A DNA stretch of 63,715 bases, filler included, from Octopus bimaculoides (Eukaryota), in NCBI RefSeq assembly GCF_001194135.2. It is 5 parts of 4 records of this genome, joined end to end, with 100 filler letters (N's around TTAATTAATTAA, not from the genome) between each part and the next. Parts side by side here need not be neighbours in the genome. Positions count along the whole stretch, not along the records: positions 34,315 to 50,179 come from NC_068990.1; 4 more parts are not named here. One strand, given 5' to 3'. The position numbers and the translations under genes are program-made. Below the pieces are notes generated by a model that worked only from the letters and a program-made list of their open reading frames with translations, made no database searches and was not told where the DNA came from. The stretch's first letter is position 1. Every line of letters begins with the position of its first letter. Positions 44,728 to 44,790 of the stretch are shown one piece after another.

Positions 44728-44790
44728 TACTCAAGGATCACCGTCTGTGAGTCTTTCAAAACATACGAAGAGCGTGTATCGCCCCTTCAT
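44728..44790 (-). other. Candidate poison (PTC) cassette exon in SMNDC1 intron
   Basis: 63 nt between ctcttgtatttctag| and |gtaagt, with a ctaat branch-point-like motif upstream. In-frame TGA at 44733-44731; stops in all three frames. Confidence 0.65.

What the first reader, a model, noticed from the sequence alone, without database searches (positions are those of the whole stretch)
44728..44790. Candidate autoregulatory poison exon in a cephalopod SMNDC1 gene
Seen: in the ~5.8-kb phase-0 intron between the KKDLQ exon and the first Tudor exon is a non-repetitive 63-nt segment (atg aag ggg cga tac acg ctc ttc gta tgt ttt gaa aga ctc aca gac ggt gat cct TGA gta). It has a ctaat branch-point-like motif, a good acceptor (ctcttgtatttctag) and a consensus GTAAGT donor. 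It has stops in all three frames and keeps 4 CpGs in an otherwise CpG-depleted intron, hinting at constraint. An alternative AG 16 nt upstream also gives a PTC. If included, the stop lies 176 nt upstream of the junction after the next exon, so it would be an NMD substrate. Established (from memory, verify): SMNDC1 carries an NMD-coupled autoregulatory poison exon in vertebrates and plants. Inference: this is the cephalopod equivalent, which I do not know to be described.
Basis: partly seen in the sequence, partly recalled or inferred. Interest (0 to 1): 0.88.

Follow-up and report, generated by a model that had tools for sequence, protein, structure and literature searches.

The report
Unproven poison-exon candidate in cephalopod SMNDC1
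A 63-base stretch in an intron of a cephalopod splicing-factor gene (SMNDC1) looks like a "poison exon", but apart from a small cluster of CpG dinucleotides it looks no different from chance look-alikes nearby, and no transcript or cross-species data could be reached to test it.

Summary
The gene on the minus strand is SMNDC1/SPF30. The 63-nt segment (44790-44728) lies in the 5,777-nt phase-0 intron after ...KKDLQ. That is the intron that hosts the published poison exon in human, mouse, chicken and Arabidopsis. The segment has a CTAAT motif, a pyrimidine-rich AG acceptor, a GTAAGT donor, an in-frame TGA and 4 of the intron's 22 CpGs.

Most of this is what chance gives:
- 64 acceptor/donor pairs at least as good occur on the gene strand of the 15.9-kb piece, and 61 on the opposite strand.
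- 97% of all AG..GT pairs in this intron would introduce a premature stop.
- GTAAGT occurs at its expected frequency.

Only the CpG cluster stands out, and only marginally (intron-wide P about 0.03-0.06). The three real coding exons contain no CpG at all.

I found no repeat copy within the piece, no Rfam match, no significant RNA structure and no similarity to the available fragments of the vertebrate poison exon. Every route to cephalopod transcripts or orthologous introns came back empty.

My estimates: silent or noise-level pseudoexon about 0.55, real poison exon about 0.25. Public octopus RNA-seq and a cephalopod intron alignment would settle it.

The parts
48805..48870 (-). SMNDC1 coding exon 2 (VEASLTSDPDNLDLLKLKKDLQ), donor CAG|gttagt
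   Evidence: Read directly. Matches exon 2 of the oyster and squid-like SMNDC1 proteins.
43028..48804 (-). Intron 2: 5,777 nt, phase 0, 29% GC, CpG observed/expected 0.18
   Evidence: Same position as the vertebrate intron after ...KDLQ, shown by intron-retaining transcripts.
44817..44821 (-). CTAAT branch-point-like motif. Its A at 44818 is 27 nt from the acceptor G and 11 nt before an intervening AG.
   Evidence: Read directly. The three real exons have a CTAAY motif upstream of their acceptor with no intervening AG.
44791..44808 (-). Acceptor region: alternative AG at 44808-44807 (79-nt form starting at 44806), then the pyrimidine tract and AG ctcttgtatttctag
   Evidence: Rough acceptor score is -0.4 for the 63-nt form and 0.9 for the 79-nt form, against 0.0, 5.2 and 4.6 for exons 2, 3 and 4.
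44728..44790 (-). Candidate 63-nt cassette (pseudo)exon. In-frame TGA at 44733-44731. CpG at 44781, 44774, 44767, 44743. 46% GC.
44722..44727 (-). GTAAGT donor motif (GTAAGTAT, the same 8 bases as the exon 3 donor); the exon side, GTA, is poor
   Evidence: One of 5 GTAAGT on this strand, about the number I estimate from base composition.
42855..43027 (-). SMNDC1 coding exon 3 (173 nt, EVIELTLQLL...WSVDG + CA), start of the Tudor domain
   Evidence: Read directly. 69% DNA identity to the Logan genomic contig L001, which carries the squid-like (inferred) protein P0004.
35884..35971 (-). SMNDC1 coding exon 4 (88 nt, (Q)YYEAKIDEILLDGTCTVTFEGYGNTDITQ)

Best explanation
The segment is most likely an ordinary intronic pseudoexon: part of the long, AT-rich intron 2 of SMNDC1 that happens to carry a usable-looking acceptor and donor. 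It is removed with the intron. If it is included at all, this happens at noise level, and the stop-containing transcript is cleared by nonsense-mediated decay without serving as a feedback device. What is shown: its splice motifs and stop codon are no better than many chance look-alikes. What is inferred: that it is not used in a regulated way.
For: - Pairs of splice-like sites at least as good are equally common on both strands of the piece (64 against 61). Eighteen pairs in about five or six places lie in this same intron.
- 96.8% of any AG..GT pair in the intron gives a premature stop.
- GTAAGT is at its expected frequency.
- An AG lies between the putative branch point and the proposed acceptor. 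None of the three real exons has this.
- The acceptor score is at the bottom of the range of the real exons.
- The segment is not sharply set off in composition. It sits in a roughly 300-nt zone of 35-47% GC and is only the third-highest GC peak in the intron.
- Real coding exons here keep no CpG, so CpG does not indicate constraint.
- Elsewhere in the piece, CpG-rich stretches lie in intron 3, where the transposon-like fragments are; I read them as younger insertions.
- No similarity to the available fragments of the mouse and human poison exon.
- The vertebrate cassette exon is itself not conserved across vertebrates.
Against: - The intron is exactly the one that hosts the autoregulatory poison exon in vertebrates and Arabidopsis.
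- Four of the intron's 22 CpG fall in these 63 nt: P 0.003 for this window, 0.025-0.057 intron-wide.
- The donor matches U1 over 8 bases, as the exon 3 donor does.
- Several alternative sites cluster here, and every combination gives a stop.
- No repeat copy was found within the piece.
Confidence: 0.55

Rival explanations
1. It is a real poison exon coupled to nonsense-mediated decay. When SMNDC1 protein is abundant, the weak 3' splice site (44790, or 44806) is used. The 63- or 79-nt exon is then inserted between coding exons 2 and 3, translation stops at TGA 44733-44731 (or earlier), and the mRNA is degraded, lowering SMNDC1 output. This would be negative feedback as in mouse and Arabidopsis. 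All steps are inferred.
For: - Same intron as the proven poison exons.
- Splice-site scores are within the range of this gene's weakest real sites.
- The CpG cluster and exon-like GC content.
- A stop in every splice-form tested.
- Arabidopsis SPF30 raises inclusion of the mouse exon, so the response does not depend on a lineage-specific sequence.
- Intron 2 is often left unspliced in assembled vertebrate transcripts, which suggests it is a slow or regulated intron in many lineages.
Against: - No transcript evidence and no conservation evidence of any kind.
- All the intrinsic signals except CpG are at chance level.
- It is 63 nt and in frame, whereas the human exon is 190 nt and shifts the frame.
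- No similarity to the known vertebrate fragments.
- The vertebrate cassette is absent from fish by sequence, so there is no expectation of inheritance.
Confidence: 0.25
2. The roughly 260-300-nt GC- and CpG-richer block around the segment (about 44650-44920) is a comparatively young insertion or transposon remnant. Its splice-like motifs came with it and have no role. At most it is a recently exonised cryptic exon.
For: - In this piece, the other stretches with undepleted CpG lie in intron 3, where the transposon-like fragments are.
- The block is bracketed by a perfect 10-nt inverted repeat, 44921-44912 and 44653-44644.
- The intron carries other repeats just upstream, at 45051-45351 and 46010-46300.
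Against: - No second copy in the 15.9-kb piece.
- No protein-family or protein-database match for any reading frame through it.
- A 10-nt inverted repeat in 751 nt is roughly what chance gives (my estimate).
- No target-site duplication next to it (read).
- No cephalopod repeat library was available.
Confidence: 0.12
3. The block is a DNA- or RNA-level regulatory element of another kind, such as an intronic enhancer, an unmethylated protein-bound site or a small RNA, and its resemblance to an exon is incidental.
For: Local CpG retention in a heavily CpG-depleted gene body.
Against: - No Rfam match.
- Folding energy is no better than shuffled sequence on either strand: z +1.36 and +0.58, and -0.39 for the whole block.
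- Nothing else points this way.
Confidence: 0.06

Closest known systems
Human/mouse SMNDC1 (SPF30) poison cassette exon in intron 2 (Belleville et al. 2024, PMC11357089; Izumikawa et al. 2025, PMC12398788)
   Same: Same gene. Same intron: between coding exons 2 and 3, after ...KKDLQ, phase 0. Inclusion would give a premature stop well upstream of later exon junctions.
   Different: - The human exon is 190 nt and acts by frameshift, with the stop in exon 3. The candidate is 63 nt with its own in-frame TGA.
- The vertebrate exon is highly conserved (about 95% between human and mouse) and has been validated by RT-PCR with cycloheximide and by deletion in mice. The candidate has no expression or conservation data.
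- No similarity to the primer and guide fragments of the vertebrate exon.
Arabidopsis thaliana SPF30 poison exon (same papers; the abstract of PMC12393150 reports frequent alternative splicing of the conserved second intron in plants)
   Same: Same intron position in an orthologous gene. It shows that a poison exon at this position can exist without sequence similarity to the vertebrate one.
   Different: Validated experimentally (accumulates with cycloheximide, deletion lines). The candidate has not been.
Human SPF30 'exon 4a' alternative 3' splice site (PMC12398788)
   Same: A second unproductive-splicing route in the same gene. This window has an AG 23 nt upstream of exon 4 whose use would give CA|A TAA, an immediate stop.
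   Different: The human site is 17 nt upstream and shown to respond to SPF30. The site in this window is only a sequence possibility, and it lies upstream of the likely branch point.
Intronic pseudoexons (sequences with splice-site-like motifs that are not spliced in)
   Same: Same density of look-alikes on both strands. The stop codon and the GTAAGT motif are at chance frequency. An AG lies inside the would-be AG-free zone.
   Different: A marginal CpG cluster, and the location in an intron already known for poison-exon regulation in other lineages.

Membership tests
SMNDC1/SPF30 gene | Encodes the conserved N-terminal helix (...LLKLKKDLQEVIELT...) and the Tudor domain (W..GD.C.A.WS.DG.YYEA.I..I) | tested here: met
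   - tblastn with human SMNDC1 finds exons 3 and 4.
[quoted passage not shown]
SMNDC1 autoregulatory poison exon | Lies in the intron between coding exons 2 and 3 | tested here: met
   The candidate lies between 48805 and 43027. The literature gives this position. Vertebrate intron-retaining transcripts break after ...KDLQ exactly as here.
SMNDC1 autoregulatory poison exon | Inclusion introduces a premature termination codon | tested here: met
   All six splice-forms modelled stop early. This does not discriminate: 96.8% of all AG..GT pairs in the intron do the same.
SMNDC1 autoregulatory poison exon | The exon is actually spliced into some transcripts (junction reads, ESTs or cDNA) | not testable with these tools
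   - No protein with the predicted exon 2 + candidate peptide was found (low sensitivity).
- The exhaustive search listed nothing cephalopod-like beyond the query P0003 and the genomic ORF P0004, and no cassette-type isoform among the hits inspected.
- The collections appear to hold no transcripts from this species.
SMNDC1 autoregulatory poison exon | The including isoform is stabilised when nonsense-mediated decay is blocked | not testable with these tools
   Needs an experiment or RNA-seq from treated tissue.
SMNDC1 autoregulatory poison exon | Inclusion rises with SMNDC1 protein level (autoregulation) | not testable with these tools
   Needs overexpression or knock-down with a minigene or the endogenous gene.
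SMNDC1 autoregulatory poison exon | Sequence conserved above the surrounding intron in related species | not testable with these tools
   - No orthologous intron could be fetched.
- The one related genomic contig, L001 (squid-like by inference, 997 nt), covers only exon 3.
SMNDC1 autoregulatory poison exon | Sequence homology to the vertebrate poison exon | tested here: inconclusive
   Five published fragments (one human primer; mouse guide RNAs, one joined with an overlapping primer) give no alignment to the candidate region better than to 2-79% of other windows in the piece. Lengths differ (63 against 190 nt).

The most novel reading that the evidence does not exclude
The segment is a genuine, SMNDC1-responsive poison exon coupled to nonsense-mediated decay in a cephalopod. 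It would sit in the same intron as the vertebrate and plant poison exons but be unrelated to them in sequence and length. Unproductive splicing of intron 2 would then be either an ancestral eukaryotic feature of SMNDC1 whose exon sequence turns over, or a solution that evolution reaches repeatedly.
Probability: 0.22. Interest if true: 0.65.

Novelty: not a real feature. Interest (0 to 1): 0.3.

Why it matters
Belleville et al. could show the SMNDC1 poison exon only in human, mouse, chicken and Arabidopsis. They said explicitly that data were too thin to decide for other animals. A validated invertebrate example in the same intron would bear on whether this feedback loop is ancestral or arose repeatedly. 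It would also give a first documented poison exon in a mollusc. As it stands, the finding is a cheap, well-defined hypothesis and not a result. The sequence alone does not separate this segment from the many chance look-alikes in the same intron.

Tried and rejected
**Transcript evidence**
- A protein search with squid-like exon 1 + exon 2 + the candidate peptide returned no candidates. This is not informative: the word index missed even P0003, which shares most of that query.
- An exhaustive phmmer search with P0003 gave 330 hits. The short ones are intron-retention products, mostly vertebrate-like, not cassette exons.

**Orthologous introns**
- Exact look-up of the antisense open frame across the segment found nothing.
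- A composite query of all open frames within about 400 nt of the segment, plus the exon 2 frame, gave 3,226 word candidates and none scoring.
- None of ten window open frames is in the collection.
- P0003 and P0001 have no contigs on record.
- Metagenome scans with the exon 3 peptide and with a 22-mer of the segment found nothing.
- L001, the one related contig, aligns only over exon 3.

**Other identities for the segment**
- Rfam: only low-complexity microRNA-like hits elsewhere in the piece.
- RNA folding: no better than shuffled sequence.
- Pfam on the antisense frame: nothing.
- Intra-piece repeats: none at the segment.

**Homology to the vertebrate exon**
- Only primer and guide fragments were available, and they show no signal. 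An 8-mer shared with a human primer, CTCAGACT, is at chance level.

**Arguments rejected**
- I rejected CpG retention as proof of constraint, because the coding exons have no CpG.
- I rejected 'stops in all three frames' as evidence, because nearly all pseudoexons give a premature stop.

**Species**

Full report
**What is there**

The piece 34315-50179 carries part of an SMNDC1/SPF30 gene on the minus strand.
- Reading the sequence gives coding exon 2 at 48870-48805 (VEASLTSDPDNLDLLKLKKDLQ, donor CAG|gttagt), exon 3 at 43027-42855 (173 nt) and exon 4 at 35971-35884 (88 nt).
[quoted passage not shown] It is 60-64% identical to two unnamed proteins, P0003 and P0004; that they are squid-like is my inference.
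- Exon 1 and the exons after exon 4 lie outside the piece.
I could not verify the species. The nearest named protein is molluscan.

**Check of the observation**

The segment, coordinates and motifs are as described.
- It is 63 nt long (44790-44728).
- The acceptor is ctcttgtatttctag and the donor GTAAGT (44727-44722).
- CTAAT lies at 44821-44817.
- TGA is in frame at 44733-44731, and there are stops in all three frames.
- An alternative AG gives a 79-nt form that also stops early.
- The stop lies 176 nt before the exon 3/4 junction.

Intron 2 is 5,777 nt, phase 0, 29% GC, with 22 CpG (observed/expected 0.18). Four of those CpG are in the segment.

**Is it more than chance?**

I scored splice sites with a rough position-weight matrix built from remembered metazoan frequencies. 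Only the relative ranks should be trusted.
- The candidate's acceptor (-0.4) equals that of real exon 2 (0.0) and is far below exons 3 and 4 (5.2, 4.6). Its donor (1.5) is a little below that of exon 3 (2.3).
- Pairs of sites at least this good, 30-250 nt apart, number 64 on the gene strand and 61 on the opposite strand of the 15.9-kb piece. Eighteen, in about five or six places, lie in intron 2.
- GTAAGT occurs five times per strand, about the number I estimate from base composition.
- Of all 3,330 AG..GT pairs in the intron, 96.8% would introduce a stop before the end of exon 4. The premature stop and 'stops in three frames' therefore carry no weight.
- An AG lies between the putative branch point and the proposed acceptor. 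None of the three real exons has one there.
- The segment is the third-highest GC peak of the intron. It sits within a broader zone of about 300 nt at 35-47% GC and is not sharply delimited.

**The CpG cluster**

This is the one unusual property.
- It is the only 63-nt window in the intron with four or more CpG.
- For this window alone, P is 0.003.
- Intron-wide, the probability that some window reaches four is 0.025 with uniform placement and 0.057 when weighted by local C and G content.
- Against reading it as constraint: the 327 nt of real coding exon contain no CpG at all, where about 13 would be expected without depletion.
- Elsewhere in the piece, stretches with undepleted CpG lie in intron 3, where the transposon-like fragments are; I read them as younger insertions.

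The cluster is thus compatible with nucleotide-level constraint, with a younger insertion, or with chance.

**Other identities tested**
- No second copy of the segment in the piece.
- No Rfam match.
- No RNA structure beyond shuffled controls on either strand or for the whole block.
- No Pfam or database match for the 60-codon antisense open frame.
- A perfect 10-nt inverted repeat brackets the block (44921-44912 and 44653-44644). By my estimate that is about what chance gives in 751 nt, and I saw no target-site duplication.

**What is known**
- Belleville et al. (PMC11357089) place the poison exon between coding exons 2 and 3 in human and mouse and at the same intron position in A. thaliana. 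They also found a poison-exon-containing chicken isoform in EST data.
- They show that inclusion rises with SMNDC1, and even with Arabidopsis SPF30 expressed in mouse cells.
- They state that data were insufficient for other animals. Their species list has no mollusc.
- Izumikawa et al. (PMC12398788) map the human cassette exon to 190 nt and describe a second route, exon 4a, an alternative acceptor 17 nt upstream of exon 4.
- They report that the cassette exon sequence is not conserved in zebrafish, medaka and some birds, and suggest that it arose after exon 4a.
- A search for 'poison exon' together with cephalopod or mollusc terms listed no relevant paper.

However, inheritance of 'the' exon is not expected. 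The candidate differs in length and mode (63 nt with an in-frame stop, against 190 nt with a frameshift). It shows no similarity to the published fragments of the vertebrate exon.

**Intron position**

The exhaustive search returned at least 17 short, vertebrate-like proteins with exons 1 and 2 joined, then ...KDLQ followed by a tail that always begins with V (GTN). This is read-through of the exon 2 donor. It shows that the vertebrate intron sits at exactly the same codon boundary as here. It also shows that intron 2 is often left unspliced in assembled transcripts.

**Attempts at the decisive tests**

All failed for lack of data, not because of negative biology.
- Transcripts.
- Orthologous introns.
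- The one related genomic contig (L001, 997 nt) aligns to the window only across exon 3, at 69% identity. If L001 is from a squid, as I infer, the introns near exon 3 do not align with this species, so a conserved block in intron 2 would be a strong signal if it could be looked for.

**Weighing**

These figures are my own rough estimates.
- I put the prior that some unproductive splicing event exists in intron 2 of this lineage at about one third. The basis is its presence in vertebrates and plants, and the pattern of turnover among lineages documented for SR protein genes.
- The intron offers about five or six comparable candidate sites.
- The CpG cluster favours this one by a modest factor.

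I arrive at about 0.25 for a real poison exon and about 0.55 for a silent or noise-level pseudoexon. The remainder goes to a young insertion or some other element.

**Verdict**

It is a clear and cheap hypothesis for anyone with octopus RNA-seq and genome alignments.

Noticed in passing
window 35972-35996 (minus strand), just upstream of exon 4: An AG lies 23 nt upstream of the exon 4 acceptor. Its use would add ATAACCTAATTTTCCCTTTGTAG and give CA|A TAA, an immediate stop. This is a possible counterpart of human SPF30 'exon 4a' (17 nt upstream, autoregulated). It lies upstream of the likely CTAAT branch point, so it may never be used.
   Followed up: partly
proteins P0090, P0092, P0098, P0099, P0111, P0113, P0116, P0123-P0125, P0135, P0136, P0141-P0144, P0150: At least 17 cluster representatives are vertebrate-like (mostly fish-like) SMNDC1 with exons 1 and 2 joined, then ...KDLQ followed by unrelated tails that all begin with V (GTN). 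These are intron 2 retention products. Intron 2 seems to be left unspliced unusually often in public transcript assemblies, including in fish-like sequences; the cassette exon is reported as not conserved in zebrafish and medaka.
   Followed up: partly
window 45051-45351 and 46010-46300: Two direct copies of about 300 nt, 92-94% identical and about 950 nt apart, lie within intron 2 upstream of the candidate. They could be a local duplication or the terminal repeats of a small element.
   Followed up: no
window 35076-35258 and 49108-49288; also 41497-41548 and 39401-39521 (inverted): Several copies of a SINE-like repeat, 82-90% identical, some with (TA)n(TG)n microsatellite tails, lie in intron 3 and upstream of exon 2. 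From memory they resemble the abundant octopus SINE; this was not verified.
   Followed up: no
window 37223-37660 (+), 42219-42461 (-), 38492-38968 (+), 39680-40179: Intron 3 holds transposon-like fragments: a helicase C-terminal piece (UvrD_C_2, E 4e-4), a reverse-transcriptase zinc-binding piece (zf-RVT, E 6e-3), both below Pfam's curated cut-offs, and a 158-aa open frame with no family. In 39680-40179 CpG is not depleted (observed/expected 1.1-1.65), unlike the rest of the gene.
   Followed up: partly
window 44912-44921 and 44644-44653: A perfect 10-nt inverted repeat (TTTTCACATG / CATGTGAAAA) brackets the 258-nt GC-richer block that holds the candidate. The predicted fold uses it as a closing stem, but the overall energy is no better than shuffled sequence (z -0.39).
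   Followed up: yes
window 36563-37012: A purine-rich, GA-rich imperfect tandem array (16 overlapping 38-nt copies, plus 71-87-nt units repeated at spacings of 90-112 nt) lies in intron 3.
   Followed up: no
window 44612-44791 (+): A 60-codon stop-free frame runs antisense across the whole candidate. It has no homologue and no Pfam match, so it is probably coincidental.
   Followed up: yes
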